Positions 30,701 to 63,884 of a DNA stretch of 64,000 nt are shown piece by piece. The DNA lies in NCBI RefSeq assembly GCF_039654945.1, contig NW_027361810.1:9052001-9116000 (forward strand). Reading direction: 5' to 3'. The number at the start of each line of letters is the position of its first letter. Position 1 is the stretch's first letter. The notes beneath the pieces are model-generated. The model ran no database searches. It worked only from the letters and a program-made list of their open reading frames with translations, and was not told the DNA's origin. The position numbers and the translations under genes are program-made. Source of the DNA: Dendrobates tinctorius. Its lineage: Eukaryota.

Positions 30701-31385
30701 TGCCCCTTATTCCCCAGACTCCTGCCCCTTATTCCCCACACTCCTGCCCCTTATTCCCCACACTCCTGCCCCTTATCCTCCACACTCCTGCCCCTTATTC
30801 TACAGACTTCTGCCCCTTATTCTCCACACTCCTGCCCCTTATTCTCCACACTCCTGCCCCTTCTTCTCCACGCTCCTGCCCCTTCTTCTCCACGCTCCTG
30901 CCCCTTCTTCTCCACGCTCCTGCCCCTTCTTCTCCACGCTCCTGCCCCTTCTTCTCCACGCTCCTGCCCCTTCTTCTCCACGCTCCTGCCCCTTATTCTC
31001 CACACTCCTGCCCCTTATTCTCCACGCTCCTGCCCCTTATTCTCCAGACTCCTGCCCCTTATTCTCCACGCCCCTGCCCCTTATTCTCCACGCTCCTGCC
31101 CCTTATTCTCCACGCCCCTGCCCCTTATTCTCCACGCTCCTGCCCCTTATTCTCCACGCCCCTGCCCCTTATTCTCCACGCCCCTGCCCCTTATTCTCCA
31201 CGCTCCTGCCCCTTATTCTCCACGCTCCTGCCCCTTATTCTCCACACCCCTGCCCCTTATTCTCCACGCTCCTGCCCCTTCTTCTCCACGCTCCTCCCCC
31301 TTATTCTCCAGACTGCTTCCCCTTATTCTCCGCACTCCTGCCCCTTATTCTCCAGACTCCTGCCCCTTATTCTCCACGCCCCTAT
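30701..31385. repeat. 22-bp C-rich minisatellite
   Basis: tgccccttattctccacgctcc units. Confidence 0.95.
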
Positions 31386-34844: not shown

Positions 34845-35695
34845 GCAGTACAATCACTGTGTACATACATTACATTACTGATCCTGAGTTACATCCTGTA
34901 TTATACTCCAGAGCTGCACTCACTATTCTGCTGGTGCAGTCACTGTGTACATACATTACTGATCCTGAGTTACATCCTGTATTATACTCCAGAGCTGCAC
35001 TCACTATTCTGCTGGTGCAGTCACTGTGTACATACATTACTGATCCTGAGTTACATCCTGTATTATCCTCCAGAGCTGCACTCACTATTCTGCTGGAGCA
35101 GTCACTGTATACATACATTACATTACTGATCCTGAGTTACATCCTGTATTATACTCCAGTGCTGCACTCACTATTCTGCTGGTGCAGTCACTGTGTACAT
35201 ACATTACTGATCCTGAGTTACATCCTGTATTATACTCCAGAGCTGCACTCACTATTCTGCTGGTGCAGTCACTGTGTACATACATTACATTACTGATCCT
35301 GAGTTACATCCTGTATTATACTCCAGAGCTGCACTCACTATTCTGCTGGTGCAGTCACTGTGTACATACATTACATTACTGATCCTGAGTTACATCCTGT
35401 ATTATACTCCAGAGCTGCACTCACTATTCTGCTGGTGCAGTCACTGTGTACATACATTACATTACTGATCCTGAGTTACATCCTGTATTATACCCCAGAG
35501 CTGCACTCACTATTCTGCTGGTGCAGTCACTGTGTACATACATTACATTACTGATCCTGAGTTACATCCTGTATTATACTCCAGAGCTGCACTCACTATT
35601 CTGCTGGTGCAGTCACTGTGTACATACATTACATTACTGATCCTGAGTTACATCCTGTATTATACTCCAGAGCTGCACTCACTCTCCTGCTGGTG
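34845..35695. repeat. 81/86-bp satellite (~10 units) directly upstream of a PLCD4 exon
   Basis: cagtcactgtgtacatacattac(attac)tgatcctgagttacatcctgtattatactccagagctgcactcactattctgctggtg. Confidence 0.95.
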
Positions 35696-36159: not shown

Positions 36160-36993
36160 TGTTGGGGATCACTCGCTTGGCAGCGGATTAGTCAGGAACA
36201 GGTTTTTCACACAAAACAGTCCATATGGTTTATTTAAATGTCATAAACCGCACCATATGCCAGGTTTCACATCACCGGCTTACACACAGTCCATTACTTC
36301 ATCACGTGTGGCTTTATACAGCATTCACTAGTCACGCCGGACTCTCTCCAGTCACCGGGTTCAGTAACTGACCTTTGTCAGTGCACATAGTTCTTTCCCC
36401 ATTCCTGGGGCTACCTCTCAGGAGCTCCTGCTCCACAGGCTGACTCCTCATCAGTCCAAGGTCCTCAACAGGACAGCATCTTTCTCCGTGTGGGGCCGTC
36501 CCAGGCTCTGCATACACATGTGGCCTGTCCGGGTGCTATTCAGGACACTTGTCCAACACCCAGGCCACCAGGTCCAAGGTCTCACCACGTGCTTCAGGAA
36601 TCCGATCCTACTCCCAGGTTCTTCCAACACAGACCTTTCAGAAGCTTGCACCCTGAACCATTCAGGTACACACACTCTGTCCATGTGACCAGACCTCAGT
36701 CACATTATATGGTTGTAACCACCCCCACGGATGGGCGGTACATGTGTGGTTAGTCAATTCCCGCCCAGCTCTCTGACTAACCCTATAAGCCACCCTGACA
36801 AGTAATACTTGTGGAACTATAAGTCCCAGCATAACCATATCATTTTGGCTTACAGCGCAGAGAACCTCTGTGACACATACTGGACATTTACAATAATGCC
36901 AGTCCCTAATTTACCATTATAATTATGCCTCCAAGCGCATCATGAAGCGCATACACAGCGCCCCCTAGCTGTAGCAGAGGTTACTGCATCACA
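36160..36993 (-). mobile_element. Old solo-LTR-like element related to the FXR1-bearing element
   Basis: Starts TG..ggggatcactcgct and ends acacagcgccccctagc..catcaca like the 675-bp LTR; middle resembles 52480-52700; no clean TSD. Confidence 0.6.
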
Positions 36994-37680
36994 CCGTGTA
37001 GGTAAAGGCTTGAAGTCCAGTGTGAATTGTGTTCAGTGTGGATTTCTTGAACTGATACATTGTGACACACCATCAGCTGTGCCAGCAAAACTAGATGTTC
37101 TCACTGTAAACAAGAATGTTTCAATACAATAAAAGCAAGCAGAGAGGAGGAAATCAGCGAGATCCTGGAGCAGAAATGAGAAATTTTGAAATTCCTTCAT
37201 TTTACTGATTTTATCTTGGCTTTGCGTTACATTGTCCTCTCTGTTCACAAACAAAACTGAAATAAAAATTAGAGGGCAGTGCATTATGGGAACTCCTGAT
37301 CACTGACACATCGCAAGCTGCAAACAATAGAATTTTTTTGTTTTCAGCTTCAGCAGTGACTGGAGCATCAAACTTCACATAACAATATCAACAGCATAAA
37401 GTTCAATAAAATAAGTAAAGTAAAATATTTGCAACGTAACTCAGCGCTATGTGCCGGGAACTCCTGGGCGAAAACGGTGGGACTTATGTAAATCCACCCA
37501 AAAGTGGGCACTATGGGGCAAATTGGGGATGGAGACTTAAAGGGGTTTTCCACCTTTGGGGACAATTTGTTTTGTACTTATATAGATGTATTTGGGGCTA
37601 AAAATCATTTTGGAATCATTCAAAATTTTGCTCCGTGTGGTTTTAACAAGCTCTTTGTTTCTCCGCACATTCAAGTTTAA

Positions 37681-43639: not shown

Positions 43640-44270
43640 GTGGAGCGGGGTCATCATTCTCAGGATCCCAGGGAGCGGGGTCGTCATTCTCAGGATCCCA
43701 TGGAGCGGGGTCATCATTCTCAGGATCCCATGGAGTGGGGTCATCATTCTCTGGATCCCAGGGAGCGAGTTCGTCATTCTCAGGATCCCAGGGAGCGGGG
43801 TCGTCATTCTCAGGATCCCATGGAGCGGGTTCGTCATTCTCAGGATCCCATGGAGTGGGGTCGTCATTCTCAGGATCCCATGGAGCGGGGTCATCATTAT
43901 CAGGATCCCATGGAGCGGGGTCGTCATTCTCAGGATCTCATGGAGCGGGGTCGTCATTATCAGGATCCCATGGAGAGGGGTCGTCATTCTCAGGATCCCA
44001 TGTAGCGAGGTAGTCATTCTCAGGATCCCATGGAGCGGGGTTGTCATTCTCAGGATCCCATGGAGCGGGGTCGTCATTATCAGAATCCCATGGAGCGGGG
44101 TCGTCATTCTCAGGATCCCATGGAGCGGGGTCGTCATTCTCAGGATCCCATGGAGCGGGGTCGTCATTCTCAGGATCCCATGGAGCGGGGTCGTCATTCT
44201 CAGGATCCCATGGAGCGGGGTCGTCATTCTCAGGATCCCATGGAGCGGGGTCGTCATTCTCTGGATCCCA
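43640..44270. repeat. 30-bp minisatellite (21 units)
   Basis: tggagcggggtcgtcattctcaggatccca. Confidence 0.97.
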
Positions 44271-47894: not shown

Positions 47895-47972
47895 GTAAAG
47901 TATTATTCGCGAGTTTCCTCAGTTTAATCAGATTTTGTGCAAATTTACACCATATCCCCAAAAAATACTACA

Positions 47973-48583
47973 GTACTGCCCCCTATGTACAAGAATATAA
48001 CTGCTATAATACTGCCCCTATGTACAAGAATATAACTACTATAATACTGCCCCCTATGTACAAGAATATAACTACTATAATACTGCCCCTATGTACAAGA
48101 ATATAACTACTATAATACTGCCCCTATATACAAGAATATAACTACTATAATACTGCTCCTATGTACAAGAATATAACTACTATAATACTGCTCCTATGTA
48201 CAAGAATATAACTACTATAATACTGCCCCTATGTACAAGAATATAACTACTATAATACTGCCGCTATGTACAAGAATATAACTACTATAATACTGCTCCT
48301 GTGTACAAGAATATAACTACTATAATACTGCCCCTATGTACAAGAATATAACTACTATAATACTGCCCCCTATGTACAAGAATATAACTACTATAATACT
48401 GCCCCTATGTACAAGACTATAGCTACTATAATACTGCTCCTATGTACAAGACTATAGCTACTATAATACTGCTTCTATGTACAAGAATATAACTACTATA
48501 ATACTGCTCCTATGTACAAGAATATAACTACTATAATACTGCCCCTATGTACAAGAATATAGCTACTATAATACTGCTCCTAT
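47973..48583. repeat. 35-bp satellite, left part
   Basis: tactgcccctatgtacaagaatataactactataa. Confidence 0.95.
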
Positions 48584-49258
48584 TGTAGGGATGTGACTCG
48601 CTCAGGTGCAGCGGGAGACAATCATGAGGCAGGTTCTTCCCAAAGTTCATGAGGTTTATTTGCTCCATAAACCATATATCTGCATATCACCAAAATAGCC
48701 TCTAGCTTAGGCACAAAAGAACATAAACGTCCGTGGCTTCAGACTCGGACCGAGAGTCTCAGCACATGCTGGGAGGTGTAGTCCTCCCCATATACAACTA
48801 ATATACACAGGCCAGGGCAATGTCCAGAGCAGCGCTGCATCTGCAGCCGCAGACACAGGAAGGCTTCTCCTTCCTTAGCACACAGGCCACTCTCTGTAGT
48901 GTCCCACCTGGACACATGGAAGTCTGTCCACACTCTGACAGACTCCCTCCACACTCTGACATGTGCCAAACACCTCAATTACATAGCCCTGTAACCACAC
49001 CCAAAGGGGATCACATGGCTATGACATCACCAAAGGTTGTATAGACACACAGGCTTCCCTGACACAGTGTAACAGAAAGATCAGCAGTACCTCTGCTGAT
49101 CAATACACCCTGGAGCCTGCATCCCAAGGCCACCCACCTTGAGACCCACAATGGTCATTTAGGACCCTGCTCCTGTTACCACACTGAATGTGCCTGTACA
49201 CCCGTCCTGGGACAGCCACACAGCGCCCCCTAGCCGACACAGTGGTAACTACACCACA
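48584..49258 (-). repeat. 3' LTR of the FXR1-bearing element
   Basis: Direct repeat of 52932-53606, about 3 mismatches seen; AATAAA on minus strand at 48655-48660. Confidence 0.95.
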
Positions 49259-50188
49259 TACCTCCCCCCTCTGTTCAAACTTGTGGGGTTGAACACATGA
49301 CATCACCCAGGTATCTTGAGACCTGGCACCCATGTCACCTTGCCCTACAAGTCGAGAGGACCATCTCCGTCTGTTTCGGTAGTCAAACTGCCTCATATTC
49401 ACGTTAGGCCTCCCCCGCCCCCAGCGGTCAGTATCTCGGCCTTGGGCTTTGGCCTTCCCGTCAACGTCCGTCAGTGTAATCAGACACTCTTTAGTCTCCA
49501 CCTGTTTGCAGTGCGCTCCGTCACCCGACCTTTCTCTCACCGGCCGGCTCTCCCAGTTCACACTGTCATGAGTCCCACGTCCAGCTGGGCCAACTGGCTG
49601 GTCTGAGTCTGACCCTCTGTCACTATGTCCACCACCGGGTCTCGTGCCTATGTTACTACGATTAGAACGGCCACTTGCGGACTCTCGACGTTCTTGCCTT
49701 CGACTACCTGTCCTTTCATTCCTTGGAGGATCCCTTCGGGTCCTTACACCTTGGGTTGGAGGTGGACGCCACCTGACGTTCTCTATCTGCTCATTCATCT
49801 GCAGTCGATCCTGTCGTAGCTGCTCAATCTCCTTCAGGTACGCTACCCGATATTCCAGGAGCATGCGAAGCTTCCCAATGCTTTCCACCGAACCAACCAC
49901 AATGGCAGGAACCATGTCAACTTCAATAACGGCTTGGATTTCACCAGCAGGTGGGATCCTCACTCTCTTCACACAGGACCGATTCACCATCTCCTGCATC
50001 ACCTTTCCAAGTCTGCCAACGACTTTCCCCACCAGATTTCTGGGTACCGGAATTATGTCTTCCACAAAGCCCAGCCGACTTTGTGCTTCCCTTGCAAGCT
50101 CCAGACGTCGAGCGGCTTTCCTATTACGCTCCACGAGCATCTGTTTCGTGCGGAGACATTGTAGGTGCATCTCCTTCAGGACAGCCAC
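49100..50188 (-). CDS. FXR1-derived KH-domain ORF (end of KH0, KH2, NES, RG-rich tail); in frame with the upstream ORF across one TAA
   Basis: MHLQCLRTKQML..RN; FVEDIIPVPRNLVGKVVGRLGKVMQE; MVP..VG..ESIG..LLEY..YLKEIEQLR..RLQ..EQ, all matching FXR1/FMR1-family motifs; no introns. Confidence 0.85.
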   Translation of the reverse strand: MAVLKEMHLQCLRTKQMLVERNRKAARRLELAREAQSRLGFVEDIIPVPRNLVGKVVGRLGKVMQEMVNRSCVKRVRIPPAGEIQAVIEVDMVPAIVVGSVESIGKLRMLLEYRVAYLKEIEQLRQDRLQMNEQIENVRWRPPPTQGVRTRRDPPRNERTGSRRQERRESASGRSNRSNIGTRPGGGHSDRGSDSDQPVGPAGRGTHDSVNWESRPVRERSGDGAHCKQVETKECLITLTDVDGKAKAQGRDTDRWGRGRPNVNMRQFDYRNRRRWSSRLVGQGDMGARSQDTWVMSCVQPHKFEQRGEVCGVVTTVSARGRCVAVPGRVYRHIQCGNRSRVLNDHCGSQGGWPWDAGSRVY

Positions 50189-50209
50189 CCTTCTCTCTGT
50201 GTCTTCCGT

Positions 50210-52102
50210 TTATGCCAGTATCACCAACTGGTCTGTTTCTGGTGCCCAGCTCACACTATAGGCCTTTACTGCCTTTTTAAAGGTCTCATGCACACCTTCG
50301 CTGGCACACGCTTCTCGCACGTCTTCGGGTACCTCCATCACGCACTTGAAGGTCATGGACTTGCTCTCATCCTGGACAGATGGCTCTGGGTTCCCCACGG
50401 ACACTTCCCTCAAGGTATCTGCCAAGACCGGGTGACTGTCTTGTGCAGCTCTTGGTTCACCATCTTCCTGAGATTTACAGTCTTCAGGACCCTTTTCCAA
50501 GATGGGCTTTGGCAGTTCTGCCTTGCTATCAGTCGGGCACGGCCGCTGTACGTCTTCACCCATCCACTTCTTCTGCAGAAGACCTTTTACTACTCCACTG
50601 AGTTCTTGCAGAACTTTATCTCGCTCCTCTGCCAGGTAGCGACGCTGATCCTCTCTCCTGAGAATCTCCTGTTGATGCTTCTCTTGGGTCTCTCTGAGCA
50701 CCTCCATATCTTCCAACAGGGTCTTGTTCATGGTTTTACATGCTGACAGGTGACCTCTGAGCTCAGAGACTTCCTTCTCCAGCTCATCCACTCTGTGCTC
50801 AGCTGCTTGCCTTAGGACTCTTTCCCGTTCGACATGTTCTGTTACAGTCTCCTTTATCAGCTGTATCTCATGATCTTGTTCTCTTTTGGCCAGCACGTGT
50901 CTCACCACTACCTCTTTAATTATATCATCAAAGGGTACCACTGGGTCAGTCACACCAGTCGAGTGAACCCTCCAGTTACCGTCCAGCACCAATGTGTCTA
51001 GTCCAGTAGTCTCATCTCCCAGCCCACCATCTGTCTTATCACGAGACCTCAGGTCCGTCAGTTGGGCAGATGTACTTCTTCCTCTGGTCAGTTCTACCTC
51101 TGACCTGTCCATGTCAGGAGCCGTCACTGTCTCAGTGTCTGCTTGTCCCACAGTCAAAGCATCTCCATCGTCAGACCAAACGTCATCAAACAAAAGAAAG
51201 TCCCGGCCCCTCTCCCAGGCATAGACTAAGTCCCGTGGTATTCCTCTACCTTGGCACTCACCACCTTTGGTCCCCTCAAACACTACTGTGTCTACTGCGT
51301 AGTTCACCGTGACCCCGTGTTTACAGCGAACCCTGATGTTTTTCTCTGTCAGAGAGAAAACGAGAGGCGTTCCTGTCAGAGTCACCTGACTCTCTGAGTC
51401 CAGCCGACCAAAGGCTCCTTCCCGGTGCAGCATCACTGTACACATCTGTGGCCCATCATTACTACCCGGAAAGGATACTCCACATTCTGAAAAAGACCTG
51501 CACATACACTGCGGTACTCCAGACATACCTACTGAGTCACCCAGTGCTGTCACTTCTTCACACTTGGCCCCTTTCTGGACCACCACCCCGCTTTGGGTTG
51601 CCACCCCAATTTTGGTCACCGCCCCCTTTTGGAACTCCACCCCTTTTTGGGTTACCACTCCAATTTGGGTCACCGCCCCCTTTTGGGACTCCACCCCTTT
51701 TTGGGTTACCACTCCAATTTGGGTCACCGCCCCCTTTTGGGTTTCCACCCCTTTTTGGGTTACCACTCCAATTTGGGTCACCGCCCCCTTTTGGGTCACC
51801 GCCCCCTTTTGGGATTTCCCCATGTCCGTCCTGCAGAACCTCTTAGGCCACAGTTCACACAGTACAGTTTGTCTTTTAACGATACCACACAAGTCTTTGC
51901 TGGCACCACCACAGCTCCTGCTGTCACTGATCACCGGCACCTCCGGCTGCTGTTCACACACATACACAGCGGCTGGTGTCACTGCAGCTCCTGCTGCGCC
52001 ATCTTCGTGGACCCGTCGATCCACCGGAAGCCGCTTGTCACCTTCGTAACCCCGCCGGGTTACTAGAAGCCGCTTGTCACCCTCAAAGATAAAAGAAACC
52101 AC
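50210..52102 (-). CDS. Upstream part of the element ORF: tandem-repeat region, coiled coil, then FXR1 KH0 (FKCVMEVPEDVREACA..FKKAV..PET.QL.IL)
   Basis: 630 open codons; last ~48 aa match FXR1; true start uncertain (GACATGG at 51112 is a good Kozak candidate). Confidence 0.7.
   Translation of the reverse strand: MVSFIFEGDKRLLVTRRGYEGDKRLPVDRRVHEDGAAGAAVTPAAVYVCEQQPEVPVISDSRSCGGASKDLCGIVKRQTVLCELWPKRFCRTDMGKSQKGAVTQKGAVTQIGVVTQKGVETQKGAVTQIGVVTQKGVESQKGAVTQIGVVTQKGVEFQKGAVTKIGVATQSGVVVQKGAKCEEVTALGDSVGMSGVPQCMCRSFSECGVSFPGSNDGPQMCTVMLHREGAFGRLDSESQVTLTGTPLVFSLTEKNIRVRCKHGVTVNYAVDTVVFEGTKGGECQGRGIPRDLVYAWERGRDFLLFDDVWSDDGDALTVGQADTETVTAPDMDRSEVELTRGRSTSAQLTDLRSRDKTDGGLGDETTGLDTLVLDGNWRVHSTGVTDPVVPFDDIIKEVVVRHVLAKREQDHEIQLIKETVTEHVERERVLRQAAEHRVDELEKEVSELRGHLSACKTMNKTLLEDMEVLRETQEKHQQEILRREDQRRYLAEERDKVLQELSGVVKGLLQKKWMGEDVQRPCPTDSKAELPKPILEKGPEDCKSQEDGEPRAAQDSHPVLADTLREVSVGNPEPSVQDESKSMTFKCVMEVPEDVREACASEGVHETFKKAVKAYSVSWAPETDQLVILA
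51570..51810. repeat. 18/54-bp tandem repeat inside the LTR element (reads QKGAVTQIGVVTQKGVE)
   Basis: Repeated ccaccccttttgggttaccactccaatttgggtcaccgccccctttgg-type units. Confidence 0.85.
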
Positions 52103-52931
52103 AAAAGCGCGCCCATAGGGCCTTACCAGTGCAGGTATAATGGGTTACGCAGCAATAATACAGGGTACTCACCCTTAATAGTTGTGTAAAGCCACAACTA
52201 CTGTATCCGCTTAGTCACATGCCATAAAGCTGCAGCAGGATGGTGTAGACAGACAGCGTCTGCTACCAATGCTCCCAGGGCAGATCCCTTAAAGAAAACA
52301 CCAGGTCCCTGTGCTGCGAGACCTTCGTGACCCCACTGAGCCACAGCAAGCACCTTCAGGTTTTGCAGAGGAAAAGAAAAAAAAAAACAAAAACACATGC
52401 ACAGTCTCTCACATGTCCTGTCCGTGTGCTGTTCAGGACGTACCGTCTCCACCTGAGACCGTCCAACACACAGGGCACACCGGGTGCTATTCAGGGAGCA
52501 GCCCTCCTCCCAGGGTTTCCCAACACACCGGCCTCACCAGGTCCAGGGGCTCAGCGGGTGCTCTTCAGGACATCCGTCTCCACTTGTTACTGCCCAACAC
52601 ACGCCTCACCAGGTCCAAGGTCATAGCACGTGCTTCAGGGCTCCTCCCAACACTGACCCTCCAGGACCTTGCTCACTGACCCCTCCAGGTACACAGTCTC
52701 TCACTGACCCTGGTCAGTGCAACACAGACTCCTGTCTGTTACCTGTGTCGGCCACACAGGTTCCTGGACGCCTCTTCTCCTCAGAGGTATCCCACAAATA
52801 TTAATACAGTCACTTTCTCTGACCTCGGTCAGTATTACTCACGGTTGTCAGACCGTCTGCTCTCCTGGCTCAGAATCGCCAGCGCTGCCACACGTGCTTC
52901 TGGGAGTCGCTGCCCGCAGTCTGTCACCAAT

Positions 52932-53606
52932 TGTAGGGATGTGACTCGCTCAGGTGCAGCGGGAGACAATCATGAGGCAGGTTCTTCCCAAAGTTCATGA
53001 GGTTTATTTGCTCCATAAACCATATATCTGCATATCACCAAAATAGCCTCTATCTTAGGCACAAAAGAACATAAACGTCCGTGGCTTCAGACTCGGACCG
53101 AGAGTCTCAGCACATGCTGGGAGGTGTAGTCCTCCCCATATACAACTAATATACACAGGCCAGGGCAATGTCCAGAGCAGCGCTGCATCTGCAGCCGCAG
53201 ACACAGGAAGGCTTCTCCTTCCTTAGCACACAGGCCACTCTCTGTAGTGTCCCACCTGGACACATGGAAGTCTGTCCACACTCTGACAGACTCCCTCCAC
53301 ACTCTCACATGTGCCAAACACCTCAATTACATAGCCCTGTAACCACACCCACAGGGGATCACATGGCTATGACATCACCAAAGGTTGTATAGACACACAG
53401 GCTTCCCTGACACAGTGTAACAGAAAGATCAGCAGTACCTCTGCTGATCAATACACCCTGGAGCCTGCATCCCAAGGCCACCCACCTTGAGACCCACAAT
53501 GGTCATTTAGGACCCTGCTCCTGTTACCACACTGAATGTGCCTGTACACCCGTCCTGGGACAGCCACACAGCGCCCCCTAGCCGACACAGTGGTAACTAC
53601 ACCACA
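52932..53606 (-). repeat. 5' LTR of the FXR1-bearing element
   Basis: Direct repeat of 48584-49258; followed on the minus strand by the PBS. Confidence 0.95.
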
Positions 53607-55890
53607 CTATGTACAAGAATATAACTACTATAATACTGCTCCTATGTACAAGAATTTAACTACGATAATACTGCTCCTATGTACAAGAATATAACTACTA
53701 TAATACTGCCCCCTATGTACAAGAATATAACTACTATAATACTGCCCCTATGTACAAGAATATAACTACTATAATACTGCTCCTATGTACAAGAATATAA
53801 CTACTATAATACTGCTCCTATGTACAAGAATATAACTACTATAATACTGCCCCTATGTACAAGAATATAACTACTATAATACTGTCCCTATGTACAAGAA
53901 TATAACTACTATAATACTGCTCCTATGTACAAGAATATAACTACTATAATACTGCTCCTATGTACAAGAATATAACTACTATAATACTGCCCCTATGTAC
54001 AGGAATATAACTACTATAATACTGCTTCTATGTACAAGAATATAACTACTATAATACTGCTCCTATGTACAAGAATATAACTACTATAATACTGCTCCTA
54101 TGTACAAGAATATAACTACTATAATACTGCTCCTATGTACAAGAATATAACTACTATAATACTGCTCCTATGTACAAGAATATAACTACTATAATACTGC
54201 TCCCTATGTACGAGAATATAACTGCTATAATACTGCTTCTATGTACAAGAATATAACTACTATAATACTGCTCCAATATACAAGAATATAACTACTATAA
54301 TACTGCTCCTATGTACAAGAATATAACTACTATAATACTGCTCCCTATGTACGAGAATATAACTACTATAATACTGCTCCTATGTACAAGAATTTAACTA
54401 CTATAATACTGCTCCTATGTACAAGAATATAACTACTATAATACTGCCCCTATGTACAAGAATATAGCTACTATAATACTGCCCCTATGTACAAGAATAT
54501 AACTACTATAATACTGCCCCTATGTACAAGAATATAACTGCTATAATACTGCCCCTATGTACAAGAATATAACTACTATAATACTGCCCCCTATGTACAA
54601 GAATATAACTACTATAATACTGCCCCTATGTACAAGAATATAACTACTATAATACTGCCCCTATGTACAAGAATATAACTACTATAATACTGCCGCTATG
54701 TACAAGAATATAACTACTATAATACTGCTCCTATGTACAAGAATATAACTACTATAATACTGCTCCTATGTACAAGAATATAACTACTATAATACTGCCC
54801 CTATGTACAAGAATATAACTACTATAATACTGCCCCCTATGTACAAGAATATAACTACTATAATACTGCCCCTATGTACAAGACTATAGCTACTATAATA
54901 CTGCTTCTATGTACAAGAATATAACTACTATAATACTGATCCTATGTACAAGAATATAACTACTATAATACTGCCCCTATGTACAAGAATATAACTACTA
55001 TAATACTGCTCCTATGTACAAGAATATAACTACTATAATACTGCCCCTATGTACAAGAATATAACTACTATAATACTGCCCCTATGTACAAGAATATAGC
55101 TACTATAATACTGCTCCTATGTACAAGAATATAACTACTATAATACTTCTCCTATGTACAAGAATTTAACTACTATAATACTGTTCCTATGTACAAGAAT
55201 ATAACTACTATAATTCTGCTCCCTATGTACAAGAATATAACTACTATAATACTGCTCCTATGTACAAGAATATAACTACTATAATACTGCTCCTATGTAC
55301 AAGAATATAACTACTATAATACTGCTCCCTATGTACGAGAATATAACTGCTATAATACTGCTTCTATGTACAAGAATATAACTACTATAATACTGCTCCT
55401 ATGTACAAGAATATAACTACTATAATACTGCTCCTATGTACAAGAATATAACTACTATAATACTGCTCCCTATGTACGAGAATATAACTACTATAATACT
55501 GCTCCTATGTACAAGAATTTAACTACTATAATACTGCTCCTATGTACAAGAATATAACTACTATAATACTGCTCCTATGTACAAGAATATAACTACTATA
55601 ATACTGCTCCCTATGTACGAGAATATAACTGCTATAATACTGCTTCTATGTACAAGAATATAACTACTATAATACTGCTCCTATGTACAAGAATATAACT
55701 ACTATAATACTGCTCCTATGTACAAGAATATAACTACTATAATACTGCTCCCTATGTACGAGAATATAACTGCTATAATACTGCTTCTATGTACAAGAAT
55801 ATAACTACTATAATACTGCTCCAATATACAAGAATATAACTACTATAATACTGCTCCTATGTACAAGAATATAACTGCTATAGTACGGCC
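53607..55890. repeat. 35-bp satellite, right part
   Basis: Same unit; register resumes exactly after the CTAT TSD. Confidence 0.95.
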
Positions 55891-57250: not shown

Positions 57251-59158
57251 CTACGGAGGCATTACCTGTCGGTAATCGGCCATGCACACCTCAGCGGGTT
57301 CGCCCCGGCAGGACAACCCATCGGCATTGCCATGTTCACTGCCCTTTTTGTGTTGTACAGTAAAGTCGTACTGTTGAAGGGCAAGGCTCCAGCGGAGCAA
57401 CCATCCATTGGTTACGGATACTGTGTGCAACCAGCTCAGAGGGTTGTGGTCGGTTACCACCGTGAAGGTGCGCCCGTACAGGTAGGGCTGCAAACGTTGC
57501 AATGCCCACACCATGGCCAGACACTCCTTCTCGATGGTCGAGTATGCCACTTCTCTCTGCAAAAGTTTCCGGCTCAGGTACAACACGGGGTGCTCCTGGT
57601 TCCCCGAGTCGACCTGGCTGAGCACAGCACCGAGGCCAAACTCGCTGGTGTCGGTCTGTACCAGAAACAGGCGACTGCTGTTGACTACTCTCAACACTGG
57701 AGAGCTGCACAGGGCTGCTTTCAAAGCTTGGAAAGCCGCCTCAAAGTCATCTGTCCAGTTGACTGTTTGGGGTAGCCTCTGCTTGGTGAGGTCCGTCAAG
57801 GGTTTTGCAAGGGCGCTATAGTCCTGCACGAACCGCCTATAGAACCCTGCAGTGCCCAAGAAGGACTTCACCTGTTTCTTGGTCCTGGGGGTGGGCCAGG
57901 ACGCAATTGCGTCCACCTTTTCTGGCTCTGACCTCATGCAACCCCCGCCAACCCGGTGCCCCAGGTACTGGACCTCGCTCATGCCCATCTGGCACTTTCC
58001 TGGCTTGATAGTCAGGCCTGCCTGGTGAAGACGCTTGAGCACCTCCTGGAGATGCTGAAGGTGTTCCTCCCAGGTGGAACTGAAGATGGCGATGTCGTCC
58101 AAGTACGCCACCGCGTACTCCTCCAGTCCCCGAAGCAGGTGGTTGACCATCTGCTGGAAAGTGGCAGGGGCATTTTTCATGCCGAAGGGCATGACCGTGG
58201 ACTTGTACAGTCCAAAGGGGGTGATAAAGGCGGATTTCTCCTGCGCCTCAGGGCTCAGGGGAATCTGCCAGTATCCACGACTCAGATCCATGATGGATAT
58301 GTACCTTGCTTTTGCCAACCGCTCAAGCAGATCCTCGATGCGCGGCATCTGGTAGGCATCAGAGGTTGTGATGGCGTTGAGACCCCTGTAGTCCACGCAG
58401 AACCGGGTGGTTCGATCCTTTTTAGGCACAAGGACTACAGGTGAGGCCCACTCGCTTTTTGACCATCGAATCACCCCCAGCCTTAACATCTCATTAATCT
58501 CTTGGCGCATGACTTGTTGCACCTCCTCAGAGATCCAATAAGGTGTTCGCTGTAGTGGGGTGTGATTCCCGGTGTCCACCTCATGAACCGCTAACTCCGT
58601 CCTCCCAGGTCGGTTGGTGAACACGGCCCGGACGGGTTCCAGGGCTTCCACCAACTGCGACCGCTGGGATACGGTTAGCAAACCACTTATCTCCATGTCC
58701 TCAATGGACCCATTGGCCTTGGCTTGGGCCAGCATGTCCAGGAGGGGATCTTCCTCCCCATCCTCGGGCAGGTTGCAGACCGGTAGGACGCAAGCTTCAC
58801 GTTCGTGGGGCGCCTTCAGCATATTGACGTGAAAGGCCTTGCGCCTACCCCGAGCATGGTCAAGCGTGACCACGTAGGTGAACCGGTTGAGCTGTTGGTG
58901 GACGACGTATGGGCCTTCCCAGGCTGCCTGAAGCTTATCCGTTGGTACGGGGACCAGCACCGATACCTTTTGACCCACCTGGTAGGTCCGCTCCCGGGCG
59001 TTCTGGTCGTACCAGTGCTTCTGGTCAGCCTGAGCCTGCGTCATGTTGTCATGCACCAATTGCGTCAAGGTCTGCATCTTGTCACGGAAGCGCATGACAT
59101 AATCCACGATGGACACTTCTGTGGGGTTTGGCTCATCTTCCCAGGATTCTCTTATCAA
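57251..59158 (-). pseudogene. Gypsy pol fragment: integrase C-terminus (GPY), reverse transcriptase, RNase H
   Basis: WEGPY, RFCVDYR, MPFGMKNAPATFQ, YLDD, TDTSEFGLGAVL, EKECLA, TDHNPL, NADGLS. Confidence 0.93.
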
Positions 59159-60003
59159 CCCAAGGGGTCCCCGGACTCGCCTGCCATACAGGAGCTCGAA
59201 GGGGGAGAACCGGTCGAGGCCTGCGGAACTTCTCTGTAAGCGAACAGCAGGTGTGGGAGGTACCGCTCCCAGTCGCGACGTTGGGTCTCAACCAGCATGC
59301 GGAGCATCTGTTTGAGGGTACCGTTGAAGCGTTCACACAAACCATTAGTCTGTGGGTGATACGCACTCGATACCAGGTGCTTCACCTGAATTTTCTCACA
59401 GAGAGCCTCCATTAGGCGAGACATGAATTGGGTCCCTTGATCAGTAAGCATCTCCCTGGGAAATCCTACGCTTAAAATGATGGTCACCAGTGAGTCAGCC
59501 ACCTTATCTGCCCTGGTTGAAGACAGAGCTACTGCCTCTGGGTACCGGGTAGCGTAGTCTACCACGGTGAGAATGTATTGCTTTCCAGAGCTGCTGGGGA
59601 TGGCCAGCGGGCCTACAATGTCCACCGTGATTCTCTGGAAAGGCTCCTCTATCACCGGCAAAGGGATAAGGGGAGCCTTAAGAGCAGGCCCCGCCTTACC
59701 CACTTTTTGAAAGGTGTTACAGGAGCGGCAGTATTGTGTTACATCTGTCCCCATCTTGGGCCAATAGAAGTGTTGAGACAGCCGTGCCTTTGTTTTGCTG
59801 ATCCCCAAGTGTCCAGCGAGTGGAATCTCATGGGCAATCCGCAACAACTCAGTTCTGAACTGTAGGGGGACGACTAGCTGTCTTTCCCTCAACCACTCCT
59901 TTTGGGGATCTCCGGGTACTGTCTCCCGGTACAACCTTCCTCGTTCCCAGAACACCCTCTCCTTATCAGGCTCGGAGGTGGGCGTCTCGGCGAGGTGTCT
60001 CAA
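59155..60003 (-). pseudogene. Gypsy integrase (HHCC zinc finger + DDE core), frameshifted from RT
   Basis: AHEIPLAGHLG..FYWP..C; VDIVGPL; TDQGTQF; YHPQTNGLCERFNGTLK. Confidence 0.92.
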
Positions 60004-60779
60004 TTTCTCCAGGCTTGCATCTGAGTGCAGAGCAGCCTGGAACTACTTGCTGGAGGCTGCCAGAAGTGACGTCAGGGACCCTTCCTTACTGGGACCCTCT
60101 AGAACCGGCTCTGGGTTCACCTCTGGTTCAGTCTCTCCTGTAGCAGAAGAGGGTCCAGAAGACAGTGCGCTACCTGCGATCTGGGCACTCTGACTGCGTG
60201 TGACAGCTGCTATGTATGCTGTCTCCCTGGGGATTTCTACAGACCCACCAGTCGGTGCTGCTATGGGCTCTTCCTCCCCATCCACCCCCAACACTTCAGG
60301 AGCAGTGCTACTTATGGGCCAGTTACCTTCCTCGGTGGCACTGGTCAGTTGCATGGCATTACCTTCCTCATGGTCCCCATGCACCTCCCCATTTCCTTGA
60401 GCACCGTTGCTTGCTCCTGCCAGGGATTCCTCAGCCGTCTCACTCCGTAGAGTGACAGAGCTGAGCACTTCGGTACCTGTGGACACATCTACCGTTTCAA
60501 AGAAATGGTTAACAGGTTCCGTCGGCACAGATACATCATCATCATCATCATTCCTAGGAAAAGAATGGTTATCAGATTGCTTTGGTAAAGTTACATCACC
60601 ATCATTCCTGGGGAGAGAATGGTTGTTAGTGGCATCATTACTCATCAAGGCATTTGCAGGTAACACATTCAGTTTCCTGTCATCATCATCATCATCATCA
60701 TCAGGGTTAACATTGCCCTTATTATCAAATTGGGGAGGGGTGTCAGGGACATAGTATGCAACCATCCTCCCCAAGTCAG

Positions 60780-62183
60780 TTCCCAATAAAACATCAGTGG
60801 GCAGGTTTTCGGACACTCACACTTCCCTCACCCCGCTCCCAGCACGCCAATCAAGGAATACCCGGGCCACTGGCAAGAGACAGCGGGTACCCCCAATCCC
60901 GGTGACAGTCAGGGTTTTCCCCTCAACAAACTCTTCAGGGGCCGCCAGTCCAGGACGGATGAGGGTTCGTTCAGCCCCGGTGTCCTTGAGGCCTGAAGCA
61001 AGACGGGCCCCCACCTGGACAGGTTGAACGTTGTCGTCAATCCTCCCAACCACACCTCCCACCAAAAGAACAGAGGCGTTGGGCCCAGAAGCCTTGGCTG
61101 TGGGTTTCTTCGGCTTTTCCGGACAGGTGGAACGGAGGTGACCAGTCCGATCGCAGTTGTAACACTTGCGACTGTCAGTAATAGGCCTGGCGTTGGTATC
61201 TGGGCCAGGGCCTCCGGAGTGACGGCTAGCTGGGGCACTGGGGTTGGTTGCAGGCTTTCCAGCTGGTGGTGAATGGCCTCCGCGTCTCTGGCTTCCGGTT
61301 GGCCTCGTAGTTGTCGGCGATCTGAGCCGCTTTGTCAGCTTTCGTTGGTTCGCGGTCCAGGATGAACTGTCGGACCTCAGCTGGGCAGAGATGCAGGAAC
61401 TGGTCTTTGATCATCAGGTCCCGTAGCTGCTTAAAGGAATCAGTCCTTGCACCACATCACTATAGCTATCGTGTGGGCCACGTTGGAGGTTCCGGAACTT
61501 CTTTCAGTATACCTCAGGTGTCAGTCGGTATTTGGCGATCAGAGCCTGCTTGATGGCATCATAGTCGTCGTCTTCTGACGGCAGAGAAGCAAACGCCTCC
61601 AGAGCTTTGCCTTTTAGCCCTGGAGTCAAGTACCTGGCCCATTGGACCTTATCCAGCCGGTACTGTCGGCAGGCTTTCTCAAAGGCTCGCAGAAACGTGT
61701 CCAAGTCCCCATCCTTTTCCATCATGGGAAAATGCTCTGGCCGGGGTTTAGGAGTCTGGACGCTGCTGGGCTCACTGCTTCGGGTTGTGGGGGTGGAGCA
61801 CCTCCAGTTCATGGGCCCTCTGCGCCTCGCGCTCAGCTCGCTGCTCTGCTCTCTCCGCCTCTGCTCGGCTTGCTGCTCCTCTCTTTCCCGAGCTTGCTGG
61901 ATCAGTGTCATACGGCCCTCGCGGTCTTCGGCAGGGAGAGTGTCCAAGGCCGCTTGCAGGTAGGGGTCCAGCGTGCTCTGGTTGAATGTGGGGCCAGTGC
62001 TCAGGAGTGGAGCCTCTGCTGCAGCCCCATTGTCACTTGGGCCAACTTCTGCACCCGCTGGACTCTGGGTGTTGTCCAGCTGCACCAGAGCCACGATCAA
62101 TTGATCTCTGGTTTTGCTTGTGGCGTCAATGCATACTGCAGCAAGGTTTTCCTTTTTCTGCTGTCTGTACCAGGGTTCTCCTT
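60780..62183 (-). pseudogene. Fragmented gag (SCAN-like domain, zinc knuckle region) and aspartic protease
   Basis: DLDTFLRAFEK..W..L..G.A..A..YD.IK.AL..Y.LT.E.Y; DQFL..P.EVR.FI..REP..A..AD.Y; DTGAERTLI; several frameshifts. Confidence 0.85.
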
Positions 62184-63884
62184 TTGCCGCCATGGTTGCC
62201 AAATAAAAGATAGAAAAGAAAAACGAAGAAAAGGGAGGGAATACTTGTACGTACACAAAAATGTTTCAGGACTAGTAACCACTGAGTCTGTTCTCCAAAA
62301 CCTATGATTCAGGATTCCCGCAGGAACCTTGCAGGATTTTAGTGAGAGGAATGATTGCTCAAACCAAATCACTAATGCTCTAGGATTATCCCACCGCTGC
62401 CACCAAATATGTGAGGAACGGCGGACCGCTGTCGCCAAATTGTGACGGACAGCGGACCCTGTGCCACCAATATGTCACGATCCCACCACCGACACTGGTT
62501 TGTCAGCGGATGGAGGGACGCGACGCACTGCTGGCACACGGCTATCACAGGCACGGTGGGGGCTTATTTTAGTTATCCCATCACTAGCACCATGTGACAA
62601 AAATACAGCAAGCTAATCTTGCTCTGACAATTTACCGCAGGGGGGTATTTTGGATGCCCCACCACTGCTAACAACCTTCCAAGAACTGCGGGGATTTATG
62701 TATATCCCACTTTCTCAGTTCCACTTTGGAACTCGCAGCTCTCCGGCGCCCCCCCTTACCCTCAGGTCAGTCAGGGAACTGCCCCTAGGATAATTAGTCG
62801 CCGGACGGGCTGCTTGCTGTGCACGGGCAACTAGACTATTGCAGTAAGGGAATTATCAATGCCGTGGCCTCAACCACTCCTTCAGCAATATAAGACCCTT
62901 CTGTACTGCCAGCTAGCCTCGCCAGCCGTGCACACCACGCTGCCACAAGCTCCTGGTTTCTTCACTTAAGTTATAGACTTAATGGAGGGGTTCGAAGCCA
63001 ACCCGAACAGTAGCGTAATTATCTAAAAAAAAGGCGCATAGTTCGTTTCCTAGAGCATGGAGACAGAGCTAATAGATTTTATCATTTATTCCCAAAAGAA
63101 TGCGGGCAGTGATTACACAGATAAAAGTTGCTATAAAGTTGAGACGTTACATATGTACAAATACAAATATAAAACAAAGTAAATGAAAGAACAGAAAGTA
63201 ACACTCACATGTGCGTAGGCAGACCATGTGGCTGGGGGAGGGGCGCTTAACCAAACGTCCCCACTCATCGGCATGTCTCTCTGGCAGGAGGACTCCAGCT
63301 GAACTGACTGGAATTTGGTAGGGAATACCTATAGCCTAGGGTCGGTGACTTCACGAAATGGGTGGTCTGGTGAGGTCCAACCCCCCTTCTCTCTCAGTTA
63401 TAACTTAACTAAAAAGGTTATGATAACCATATCTTAATGGGGAAGCTCGTATGAACTCACCCATGTTTCCCAGTGTAACAAACCCAACAAGAAAACATCA
63501 AGAATGCACTAGATAGGACACTCCATTTGGGAGCAATCCATATCTCAATTTCTGGAAGTCCGAGAATCGTGAACCTTAGGGGTTTAGAAAGCTGGCTTCG
63601 TGCCCTTTACAGGAATGTGAGTATCATATCTCTGTCACAAGCGAAGTGCGCGCTAGGCTTCTTTTAATATTTCCTATACCTGTATTCAAGCTTCATGGTT
63701 TCAGAACAAAGCAATGCTTTCCCTTGCAGGGGGGAAGGCTGCGAGAGGAAATGGACGGTTTCATGTTACCGGCAAGCACAGAGCTGATAAGGAGGGGGGT
63801 TGCAGCTACATGACAGGCTTGTCTCCTCAGTGTATAGCAATGGGAGATTCTAGAAAGTTCTACAAAATCATATCTTACATTACA

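What the first reader, a model, noticed from the sequence alone, without database searches (positions are those of the whole stretch)
48584..53606. Young pol-less LTR retroelement whose cargo is a captured, remodelled FXR1 (fragile-X family) RNA-binding gene
Seen: 675-bp LTRs differing at only ~3 positions, a 4-bp CTAT TSD, PBS and PPT, so this is a recent integrase-mediated insertion. There are no RT, INT, PR or recognisable gag/env motifs. A single reading frame (52102-49100, one internal stop) fills the interior. From ~50356 to ~49760 it aligns without introns to FXR1: VPEDVREACA, FKKAV, MHL..RTK, FVED..VPRNLVGKV.G..GKV, LLEY..YLKE.EQLR. Diagnostic residues fit FXR1 better than FMR1/FXR2. 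Established: FXR1 is highly conserved across vertebrates, and FMR1-family proteins control translation and RNA granules (Drosophila Fmr1 is linked to small-RNA/piRNA silencing). Inference: about half identity by eye, with the frame kept open in a still-mobile element, suggests the retrocopy has long evolved as cargo of a replicating family. It could act as an RNA chaperone or as a decoy against host FXR-dependent silencing.
Basis: partly seen in the sequence, partly recalled or inferred. Interest (0 to 1): 0.95.

Follow-up and report, generated by a model that had tools for sequence, protein, structure and literature searches.

The report
FXR1-carrying pol-less LTR retroelement family
A young, pol-less LTR retroelement in a poison-frog genome carries, fused into its only reading frame, a spliced fragment of the host RNA-binding gene FXR1; the same cargo-bearing family is multi-copy, recently active and under purifying selection across at least four dendrobatoid frog species, which is unusual for a captured host gene in a vertebrate retroelement.

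Summary
Two 675-bp LTRs (3 differences), a CTAT target-site duplication, a PBS and a PPT bound a 5,023-bp minus-strand element inserted in a 35-bp satellite. No RT, RNase H, integrase or env is present. One long frame (one stop, no frameshift) fills the interior. Its C-terminal third is an intron-less FXR-family module: KH0, KH2 and the start of the C-terminal core. The Agenet domains and KH1 are missing.

Eleven LTR-bounded relatives were examined in Dendrobates tinctorius, Ranitomeya imitator, R. variabilis and Anomaloglossus baeobatrachus. Their LTR pairs are 96-100% identical. The FXR modules form one clade (100% bootstrap). The least-derived copies nest in FXR1 next to anuran FXR1 (82%). 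Between subfamilies dN/dS of the module is 0.18-0.36; between near-identical copies it is about 1. So the cargo was captured once, has long been selected in a replicating lineage, and single insertions decay neutrally.

A sister lineage on the same backbone carries a myosin-tail segment instead.

The function is inferred: an element-encoded RNA-binding, oligomerising protein that favours its own RNA. The autonomous helper and the fold of the N-terminal domain remain unresolved. I rate it a new variant of a known kind (retroelement gene transduction), interest about 0.78.

The parts
48580..48583 (.). Target-site duplication, left copy (CTAT on the + strand)
   Evidence: Together with 53607-53610 it restores one satellite unit.
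48584..49258 (-). 3' LTR in element orientation, 675 bp, TG...CA; AATAAA at 48655-48660
   Evidence: It differs from the other LTR at 3 of 675 positions.
49259..49272 (-). Polypurine tract abutting the 3' LTR; the long frame reads through it into the LTR
   Evidence: The tract is conserved in all subfamilies.
49100..51823 (-). Single long coding frame from the probable ATG (MGKSQKG...) to the stop inside the 3' LTR; the frame is open upstream to 52102. Broken once (1 in-frame stop, 0 frameshifts).
   Evidence: Intact counterparts are P0006 (895 aa) and P0012 (900 aa) in L001 and L003.
51563..51823 (-). Lys/Gly-rich hexapeptide repeats (18-bp and 54-bp coding tandem repeat)
   Evidence: Present in all genera, including Anomaloglossus. 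The number of units varies between copies.
51167..51508 (-). Conserved N-domain of unresolved fold. It is possibly a degenerate retropepsin; the window has D-S-E where Ranitomeya copies have D-S-G.
   Evidence: Alignments. Pfam is weak only (Asp_protease_2 E=0.051, RVP 0.18, on the L006 copy). The PDB profile search was negative. AF2 confidence was low. dN/dS is 0.2-0.7.
50567..50872 (-). Long helix / coiled-coil segment
   Evidence: The AF2 model of relative P0010 has a continuous helix 308-419 at pLDDT 72-93. dN/dS is 0.3-0.6. No donor was identified.
50099..50350 (-). FXR1-derived KH0 domain
   Evidence: Pfam KH_9 (2.4e-20 in intact P0006). PDB 4ova and 4qvz. Foldseek rmsd 1.1-1.5 A to FMRP KH0.
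49829..50071 (-). FXR1-derived KH2 domain with the GxxG loop kept (GRLG); KH1 is missing between KH0 and KH2
   Evidence: PDB 2qnd at 2.4e-18, matching the KH2 part only. The FXR1-profile map shows the same KH1-sized gap in all dendrobatid copies. GxxG. Foldseek 2qnd at 7e-12.
49646..49861 (-). Start of the FXR C-terminal core (helix) and an Arg-rich stretch
   Evidence: Pfam FXMRP1_C_core 9.4e-5, below the gathering score in the window and above it in P0010. 21 Arg in 123 residues.
49265..49612 (-). C-terminal tail up to the PPT. The first half is weakly FXR1/2-like; the last ~50 residues are backbone-specific and shared with the myosin-cargo variants.
   Evidence: per-sequence P about 2e-5, always collinear.
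51824..52911 (-). Leader between the PBS and the probable start codon (no recognisable domain)
52912..52929 (-). Primer-binding site (starts TGG, 2 nt after the 5' LTR); the priming tRNA is not assigned
   Evidence: No tRNA gene in the window or loci was available for comparison.
52932..53606 (-). 5' LTR in element orientation, 675 bp; AATAAA at 53003-53008
53607..53610 (.). Target-site duplication, right copy (CTAT)

Best explanation
SHOWN. The feature is one member of a non-autonomous LTR retroelement family of dendrobatoid frogs. An ancestral element lost its polymerase region. It gained, in frame with what remained of its upstream ORF, a spliced cDNA of host FXR1 starting just before KH0 and running towards the C-terminus. 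This was one capture event. Later the dendrobatid lineage lost KH1 in frame. The element keeps LTRs, PBS, PPT and a poly(A) signal, makes 4-bp target duplications (mostly ATAN sites or TA microsatellites), and has inserted very recently. The window copy is about 0.9 My old and others about 0-0.3 My.

INFERRED, mechanism of spread. Having no RT or integrase, it must be copied by enzymes of an autonomous LTR element supplied in trans. That partner is not identified.

INFERRED, function of the ORF. The chimeric protein has an N-terminal MG start, Lys/Gly repeats, a conserved N-domain, a ~100-residue helix, then KH0-KH2 and an Arg-rich region. It is kept by selection because it helps the element's own transcript. 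Most likely it acts as a self-encoded RNA-binding, oligomerising RNP or 'Gag-substitute' protein that binds, protects and delivers the element RNA to the helper's particles. Individual insertions, including this one with its single stop, then decay neutrally.

My confidence is about 0.95 in the anatomy and history and about 0.35-0.4 in the functional mechanism.
For: Anatomy.

Absence of pol and env.

FXR module.

Spliced-cDNA nature and extent: the Anomaloglossus copy P0145 is collinear with FXR1 residues 126-556 of 637, and the profile map agrees.

Single capture: the element modules are monophyletic at 100%, and Anomaloglossus is basal at 100%.

FXR1 donor: 82% bootstrap and nearest to anuran FXR1, including the R. 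imitator host protein; supporting results.

Replicating family:
- Eleven further LTR-bounded copies in four species.
- At least 17 annotated FXR-bearing gene models in D. tinctorius, including 11 at 98-99% identity.
- LTR-pair ages of 0-7.7 My, using the rate given in PMC11152451.

Selection: FXR module dN/dS is 0.18-0.36 between subfamilies and genera, with upper bootstrap bounds of 0.54 or less. It is 0.6-1.4 between near-identical copies. The coiled coil is 0.3-0.6 and the N-domain 0.2-0.7.

RNA-binding competence: the GxxG loop is invariant, and the KH0 and KH2 models are confident.

Background: KH domains mediate RNA binding and FXR dimerisation (PMC6091053).
Against: There is no expression, translation or RNA-binding evidence.

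The helper element is unidentified. The neighbouring gypsy-type pol at 57-60 kb is unrelated.

L002 has identical LTRs although its ORF ends prematurely inside KH0. A complete cis-encoded protein is therefore not required for each insertion, although supply in trans from sibling copies is possible.

The N-domain fold is unresolved, and no gag family is recognisable, so 'Gag-substitute' is an analogy and not a demonstrated homology.

The dN/dS values are pairwise Nei-Gojobori estimates, and some dS values are near saturation. The copies came from annotated gene models, which are biased towards open frames.

Selection at the host level on some copies is not excluded.
Confidence: 0.55

Rival explanations
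1. Decoy or dominant-negative. The element-encoded protein keeps the KH-mediated dimerisation and RNA-binding parts of FXR1 but lacks the Agenet domains. It pairs with host FXR1, FMR1 or FXR2, or competes for their RNA targets, and so blunts a host pathway that would otherwise restrain the element (translation control, RNA granules or small-RNA silencing).
For: The retained region is the one reported to mediate FXR homo- and hetero-dimerisation and RNA binding, and the lost N-terminal domain mediates other partners and 60S association (PMC6091053). There is purifying selection on the module, and the KH0 and KH2 folds are intact.
Against: The module is only 46-48% identical to FXR1 and evolves far faster than host FXR1, which could erode pairing with host proteins. 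There is no evidence that FXR proteins restrain retroelements in frogs. This rival does not explain the selection on the coiled coil and the N-domain.
Confidence: 0.2
2. Host-level domestication. Some copies are maintained because the frog uses the chimeric protein, and the LTR context is incidental.
For: NCBI annotates many copies as protein-coding genes. Several ORFs are intact.
Against: Every copy examined is LTR-bounded and at a different locus, with young LTR pairs and target-site duplications. Close copies show dN/dS near 1. No LTR-less copy or orthologous shared locus was seen.
Confidence: 0.1
3. Passive hitch-hiker. The FXR1 fragment is a functionless passenger, and the open frame is fortuitous or recent.
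For: The window copy itself carries a stop. L002 and L006 have broken ORFs. Mobilisation does not need cis coding capacity.
Against: dN/dS is 0.18-0.36 with tight bounds over dS of 0.6-1.5. The frame is kept open across subfamilies and genera. The GxxG loop and KH cores are invariant. The junctions are the same in all copies.
Confidence: 0.05
4. Assembly or annotation artefact: a chimeric contig joining an LTR element and an FXR1 retrocopy.
For: None specific.
Against: The same architecture and junctions occur in independent assemblies of four species and at more than 10 loci with their own target-site duplications.
Confidence: 0.01

Closest known systems
Acutely transforming (replication-defective) retroviruses with gag-host gene fusions (from my own knowledge)
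   Same: A spliced host cDNA replaces the polymerase region and is fused in frame to the remaining upstream element ORF. LTRs, PBS and PPT are kept, and spread depends on a helper.
   Different: Here the element is endogenous, germ-line and multi-copy. It has persisted across genera under purifying selection. The cargo is an RNA-binding protein fragment, not a growth-control gene. Nothing suggests infectivity or disease.
Gene transduction by plant LTR retrotransposons (maize Bs1; sorghum and rice captured genes), as summarised in PMC7264820
   Same: A pol-less LTR element carries host gene fragments in the sense orientation.
   Different: Such transductions are reported as present in one or a few copies. 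Here all copies in four species share one capture, and the cargo is constrained. The host is a vertebrate.
Non-autonomous LTR elements without coding capacity (mouse VL30, see PMC9450689; plant LARD and TRIM, from my own knowledge)
   Same: No RT or integrase, mobilised in trans, LTR/PBS/PPT retained.
   Different: Those lack a conserved protein. This family maintains an ORF of about 900 codons under selection.
Bdelloid rotifer LTR retrotransposons with captured additional ORFs (PMC5408684)
   Same: Extra, non-canonical coding sequence is retained family-wide.
   Different: Those elements remain autonomous, with gag and pol; here pol is gone. I read only the title and abstract.
Host FXR1 (e.g. 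P0025, P0035, P0141)
   Same: KH0, KH2 with the GxxG loop, and the start of the C-terminal core. The Anomaloglossus copies are collinear with FXR1 residues 126-556.
   Different: No Agenet/Tudor domains. No KH1 in dendrobatid copies. Only 46-58% identity. N-terminal fusion to element-derived sequence. Located between LTRs.

Membership tests
LTR retrotransposon / endogenous retrovirus-like element (structural definition) | Two direct long terminal repeats with TG...CA ends | tested here: met
   675-bp LTRs, 3 differences. The same was found in 11 related loci.
LTR retrotransposon / endogenous retrovirus-like element (structural definition) | Short target-site duplication | tested here: met
   CTAT, 4 bp. 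The 4-bp duplication is perfect in 5 of the 6 copies checked.
LTR retrotransposon / endogenous retrovirus-like element (structural definition) | PBS complementary to a tRNA 3' end next to the 5' LTR | tested here: inconclusive
   A TGG-initiated site lies 2 nt after the LTR and is conserved within subfamilies. No tRNA gene was available to match it against.
LTR retrotransposon / endogenous retrovirus-like element (structural definition) | Polypurine tract next to the 3' LTR | tested here: met
Autonomous LTR retrotransposon | Encodes reverse transcriptase, RNase H and integrase | tested here: not met
   No such Pfam hit in any frame. The positive control in the same window is the unrelated pol at 57-60 kb, detected at 1e-17 to 1e-39.
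Autonomous LTR retrotransposon | Recognisable Gag (capsid / nucleocapsid) | tested here: not met
   No gag family found even at E up to 1.
Retropepsin (peptidase A2) for the N-domain | D-[ST]-G catalytic motif, a downstream G-R-D type motif, and the family fold | tested here: inconclusive
   Motif state by copy: window D-S-E, Ranitomeya D-S-G, other copies D-P-G. Pfam gives only Asp_protease_2 E=0.051 and RVP 0.18, on one copy. The PDB profile search was negative. AF2 pLDDT was 25-40. No retropepsin appears among the Foldseek hits.
FMR1/FXR1/FXR2 protein family | Tandem Agenet/Tudor domains at the N-terminus | tested here: not met
   Homology starts at FXR1 profile position about 114-125 in every copy. 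There is no Agenet or Tudor Pfam hit.
FMR1/FXR1/FXR2 protein family | KH0 domain | tested here: met
FMR1/FXR1/FXR2 protein family | KH1 domain | tested here: not met
   Absent in the window and all dendrobatid copies, with the same gap at profile positions about 214-270. Present in the Anomaloglossus copies.
FMR1/FXR1/FXR2 protein family | KH2 domain with GxxG loop | tested here: met
FMR1/FXR1/FXR2 protein family | C-terminal core (FXMRP1_C_core) | tested here: inconclusive
   The window scores 23.6 bits, below the gathering score of 29.6. P0010 scores 31.7 bits, above it. Only the first part of the profile is matched.
FXR1 orthology group (versus FMR1 and FXR2) | Groups with FXR1 in a phylogeny of the three paralogues | tested here: met
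   82% bootstrap with the KH1-retaining copies, nearest to anuran FXR1. The result is unstable when all long-branch copies are included (38-44%). Searches support FXR1. The assignment is moderate, not decisive.
Retroviral-type gene transduction | Intron-less host sequence, sense orientation, inside the LTR-PBS...PPT-LTR frame, replacing element genes | tested here: met

The most novel reading that the evidence does not exclude
A vertebrate retroelement lineage replaced its own nucleic-acid-binding and assembly function with a captured host FXR1 KH module plus a coiled coil (a 'neo-Gag'). It has kept this under selection since before the Dendrobatidae/Aromobatidae split while parasitising another element's enzymes. 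The same backbone can also swap cargo, as in the myosin-tail sister lineage. That would make it a modular, long-lived gene-transducing retroelement in animals.
Probability: 0.3. Interest if true: 0.9.

Novelty: new variant of a known kind. Interest (0 to 1): 0.78.

Why it matters
Captured host genes in retroelements are usually short-lived, low-copy accidents such as oncogene transduction or maize Bs1. Here one capture of an RNA-binding gene has been carried, remodelled and selected inside a still-active, helper-dependent family across several frog genera.

This gives a natural system for asking what a non-autonomous retroelement gains from encoding its own RNA-binding protein, and how host domains are recruited into element proteins.

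It also has a practical side. Dozens of 'FXR1-like', 'FMR1 homolog', 'restin homolog' and 'myosin-9-like' gene models in poison-frog annotations are element-encoded and should not be read as host paralogues.

Tried and rejected
1. Fold of the N-domain. Three routes failed:
- Pfam at permissive thresholds gave only two sub-threshold protease hits, on one copy.
- A PDB profile search was negative.
- Two AlphaFold runs gave pLDDT 25-40 for that region, so the Foldseek result for it is uninformative.
Retropepsin ancestry therefore remains a lead, not a finding.

2. The single exhaustive HMMER job. It was meant to target the non-FXR backbone, to find an autonomous parent. My three-sequence alignment still yielded a 725-position profile that included the FXR columns, so true FXR proteins filled the list. 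It gave only a few new family members and a host comparator.

3. The neighbouring gypsy-type pol (57-60 kb) as helper. There is no similarity to the element's LTR, leader or N-domain.

4. Priming tRNA. No tRNA gene occurs in the window or loci, so the PBS is unassigned.

5. Donor of the coiled coil. There is no significant Pfam or PDB match.

6. Species of origin from the flanks. Only one 83% repeat match was found, so the species is not proven. Copies 95-97% identical point to Dendrobates tinctorius or a close relative.

7. Rfam scan of the window: nothing.

8. A repeat finder on the satellite-rich left part of the window gave no useful output.

9. Dating lineage splits from dS with the host rate. 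I rejected this, because dS between Dendrobates and Ranitomeya modules (0.6-0.8) would imply ages far above the host divergence. Either reverse-transcription error inflates the rate or the lineages predate the species.
Full report
**Declarations first**

(a) After I wrote, in my private reasoning, a stretch of FXR1-like protein from memory. After I listed from memory some short tRNA primer-site strings. All comparators used came from tool output.

This discloses where its single stop lies.

(c) Once, in my reasoning, I glanced at a consensus line printed by the alignment tool.

(d) P0005 is an NCBI 'LOW QUALITY PROTEIN' model, that is, one adjusted by the annotators. I used it only as returned.

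(e) A human FMR1 protein (P0130) appeared in a hit list and was not used. No human contig and no living animal virus was returned by any search.

**Observation**

The window holds two 675-bp direct repeats at 48584-49258 and 52932-53606. They start TG and end CA, and they differ at 3 positions with no indels. CTAT flanks both ends. Joining the flanks restores one unit of a 35-bp satellite that runs over 47966-48583 and 53607-55886. This is a clean 4-bp target-site duplication in a satellite array.

The coding strand is minus. In that orientation a TGG-initiated primer-binding site starts 2 nt after the 5' LTR, and a G-rich polypurine tract abuts the 3' LTR. A single AATAAA lies about 75 nt before the LTR end, and the same holds in every subfamily and genus examined. 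No canonical TATA box is present.

With the rate used for this genus (2.5e-9 per site per year, PMC11152451), 3 differences in 675 bp give an insertion age of about 0.9 My.

**Coding content**

One frame runs from 52102 to 49100. Its probable start is an ATG at 51823. It reads through the PPT and ends inside the 3' LTR. In the window copy it carries one in-frame stop and no frameshift relative to intact relatives.

No other frame has any Pfam hit. No RT, RNase H, integrase, env or gag family is detectable even at permissive thresholds. An unrelated gypsy-type pol 4 kb away in the same window is detected at 1e-17 to 1e-39 and serves as a positive control.

From the N-terminus, the ORF contains:
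- Lys/Gly-rich hexapeptide repeats, encoded by an 18-bp and 54-bp tandem repeat.
- A conserved N-domain of about 115 residues.
- An acidic linker.
- A helix of about 100 residues.
- The FXR-like module.
- An Arg-rich stretch and a tail.

**The cargo**

The two ORF pieces were searched separately. They hit Pfam KH_9 (the FMRP KH0 domain), KH_1 and FXMRP1_C_core. In the PDB they hit the FMRP N-terminal domain structures (KH0 part, about 4e-9) and the FMR1 KH1-KH2 structure (KH2 part only, 2.4e-18).

P0006 is an intact D. tinctorius relative that is 92-97% identical to the window ORF at the protein level. Its FXR-like region finds true FXR1 proteins at about 1e-58, FMR1 at about 6e-51 and FXR2 at about 2e-50.

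An AlphaFold model of the Ranitomeya relative P0010 is confident for the long helix (pLDDT 72-93) and for KH0 and KH2 (82-93). Foldseek returns FMRP KH1-KH2 (7e-12) and the FMRP KH0 structures (rmsd 1.1-1.5 A, 47-51% identity) as its best matches.

The KH2 GxxG loop is invariant across all element copies and all true FXR proteins aligned.

An FXR1 profile maps every dendrobatid copy to positions about 114-213 and about 271-440. So the 5' junction is the same in all of them, and so is a KH1-sized gap. The two Anomaloglossus copies are contiguous over positions 125-380 and continue to about 547. One of these, P0145, is collinear with a salamander FXR1 from residue 126 to 556 of 637.

The cargo is therefore a spliced FXR1 cDNA that lacks the Agenet domains. 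KH1 was lost later, once, in the dendrobatid lineage.

**Which paralogue**

All element modules form one clade (100% bootstrap), with Anomaloglossus basal (100%).

With all long-branch copies included, NJ cannot decide between FXR1 (38-44%) and FMR1 (52-59%). FXR2 gets 0%. With only the least-derived, KH1-retaining copies, the clade joins FXR1 at 82% and sits beside anuran FXR1. Identity is 57-58% to Leptobrachium FXR1 and the R. imitator host protein P0141, against 46-50% to FMR1.

At columns that separate FXR1 from FMR1, the copies carry the FXR1 state 5-9 times and the FMR1 state twice. I conclude that FXR1 is the donor, with moderate support.

**A replicating family**

Protein searches found relatives only in Dendrobatoidea: D. 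tinctorius, R. imitator, R. variabilis and Anomaloglossus baeobatrachus. D. tinctorius alone has at least 17 FXR-bearing gene models. Eleven of these are 98-99% identical to each other and lie on different scaffolds.

I fetched twelve loci. Ten hold FXR-bearing copies, and every one is bounded by LTRs. LTR-pair differences and estimated ages are:

| Locus | LTR differences | Age |
|---|---|---|
| L002 | 0 of 575 | about 0 My |
| L007 | 1 of 575 | about 0.3 My |
| L005 | 4 of 830 | about 1.0 My |
| L001 | 6 of 673 | about 1.8 My |
| L003 | 15 of 676 | about 4.5 My |
| L006 | 20 of 718 | about 5.7 My |

L008 and L009 have pairs 98.7-99.7% identical. For L010 and L011 the LTRs were seen only indirectly or not examined in full.

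In the six copies where I read both flanks, the termini are TG...CA and the PBS starts TGG 2 nt after the LTR. The target-site duplications are 4 bp (perfect in five, 3 of 4 in the sixth) and are mostly ATAN, often in TA microsatellites.

- Window copy: 1 stop.
- L001, L003 and L005: open to the LTR.
- L007, L009 and L010: open through the FXR module.
- L002: ends prematurely within KH0.
- L006 (Anomaloglossus): split over several frames.

**Selection**

Pairwise Nei-Gojobori estimates for the FXR module between subfamilies and genera give dN/dS of 0.18-0.36. All bootstrap upper bounds are 0.54 or less, at dS of 0.6-1.5. Between near-identical copies the ratio is 0.6-1.4 (the window-versus-L001 comparison has too few changes to be informative).

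The helix gives 0.3-0.6 and the N-domain 0.2-0.7. This is the pattern expected when selection acts on the transmitting lineage and each inserted copy then decays neutrally.

It rejects the 'passive pseudogene' reading. It also explains why the window copy, at about 0.9 My, already has a stop.

Subfamilies A (the window's) and B of D. tinctorius differ by dS of about 0.09 in the N-domain, 0.19 in the helix and 0.85 in the FXR module. They are therefore mosaics, as expected from recombination between co-replicating retroelement RNAs. That explanation is an inference.

**A second cargo**

P0004 and P0142 (D. tinctorius, annotated 'myosin-9-like' and 'uncharacterized') share the backbone: the end of the N-domain, the linker, the start of the helix, and the tail before the PPT. 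In place of KH0-to-core they carry a Myosin_tail_1 segment (9e-75 and 9e-29).

L012 is LTR-bounded (27 differences in 720 bp, about 7.7 My). L004 is a truncated copy. The two share about 80% identity over 2.2 kb.

The first half of the shared tail matches, weakly but always collinearly, the region after the C-core of true FXR1 and FXR2 (per-sequence P about 2e-5). The myosin lineage therefore probably descends from an FXR1-bearing ancestor by internal replacement. This is tentative.

**The N-domain**

Its alignment across subfamilies shows conserved motifs: a D-S-G type motif in Ranitomeya, D-P-G in others and D-S-E in the window, followed downstream by a G-R-D type motif. The pattern is reminiscent of retropepsins.

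The evidence is only two sub-threshold, full-length Pfam matches on one copy. The PDB profile search was negative, and both structure models were unusable for this region. I therefore list it as inconclusive.

**How it most likely works**

Shown: the family is pol-less yet has inserted recently and repeatedly, so its RNA must be reverse-transcribed and integrated by enzymes supplied in trans. The partner is unknown. The adjacent gypsy-type element is unrelated.

Shown: the ORF is under purifying selection in the transmitting lineage.

Inferred: the protein benefits the element. According to PMC6091053, KH domains mediate RNA binding and FXR dimerisation, while the Agenet N-terminal domain mediates other partners and 60S association. 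Given also the long helix and the Arg-rich region, the most economical reading is a self-encoded, oligomerising RNA-binding protein. It would bind and protect the element's own transcript and promote its uptake by the helper's particles. This is a functional substitute for Gag/nucleocapsid, and I put it at about 0.35-0.4.

Host domestication (about 0.1) and a neutral passenger (about 0.05) fit the data worse.

One caution applies. L002 has identical LTRs but a truncated ORF, so a complete protein need not be encoded in cis for each insertion event.

**Comparison and novelty**

The architecture works like retroviral gene transduction: spliced host cDNA in place of pol, an in-frame fusion, and helper dependence. 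It also resembles plant Bs1-type LTR-retrotransposon transduction.

It differs in that such captures are reported in one or a few copies (PMC7264820). It also differs from VL30, LARD or TRIM-type non-autonomous elements, which lack a conserved ORF.

Literature searches combining FXR1 with LTR retrotransposon, frog, Ranitomeya or retrogene terms found nothing relevant. The D. tinctorius genome paper does not mention it.

I rate it a new variant of a known kind.

Noticed in passing
L004:5713-9449 and L012:5688-12906 (D. tinctorius); proteins P0004, P0142: A sister lineage on the same element backbone carries a myosin-tail (Myosin_tail_1) segment where the FXR1 module would be. L012 is LTR-bounded and old (about 7.7 My), and L004 is truncated.
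   Followed up: partly
window 57251-60003 (minus strand), possibly extending to about 62256: An unrelated Ty3/gypsy-type pol whose integrase (H2C2 zinc finger plus core) lies upstream of RT and RNase H. I recall this domain order from Gmr1-like elements. The upstream ORFs (60043-60816, 61504-62256) have no clear Pfam hit. It has no similarity to the FXR1-bearing element.
   Followed up: partly
window 36300-37300: A degraded relic with 75-80% identity to leader and LTR segments of several family members (L001, L003, L004, L005, L008, L012), in the same orientation as the main element. It is probably an old fragment of a related element.
   Followed up: partly
window 47966-48583 and 53607-55886: A 35-bp satellite array (about 82 units in all, about 95% matches) that was split by the insertion.
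   Followed up: yes
window 17614-18332, 19992-20738, 23310-25291, 26391-29634, 30701-31383, 34854-35695, 43641-44270: The window is unusually rich in distinct tandem arrays, with periods of 57, 24/189, 67, 41, 22, 86 and 30 bp. The 41-bp array contains a short inverted segment at 28182-28314.
   Followed up: no
L001/L003 versus L007/L010 (D. tinctorius subfamilies A and B): Synonymous divergence is strongly discordant along the ORF: about 0.09 in the N-domain, 0.19 in the helix and 0.85 in the FXR module. The subfamilies are therefore recombinant mosaics.
   Followed up: partly
TSDs of the window copy, L002, L003, L005, L006, L007, L009: Insertions favour ATAN tetranucleotides, and four of nine lie in TA/AT microsatellites. 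This suggests a target-site preference of the unknown helper integrase.
   Followed up: no
L002:11033-11410 and P0007-cluster proteins: Subfamily B carries a second, more canonical-looking copy of the N-domain (D-P-G ... G-R-D) downstream of the degenerate one, that is, an internal duplication of that domain.
   Followed up: partly
window 51563-51823 versus L001: The number of coding hexapeptide repeat units differs between copies. The window has about two more units than L001.
   Followed up: no
NCBI annotations of P0004, P0009, P0013, P0022, P0002, P0140, P0145: Element-encoded ORFs are annotated as host genes ('myosin-9-like', 'restin homolog', 'fragile X messenger ribonucleoprotein 1 homolog', 'fxr1-like'). 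These names are misleading for gene-family counts in poison frogs.
   Followed up: yes
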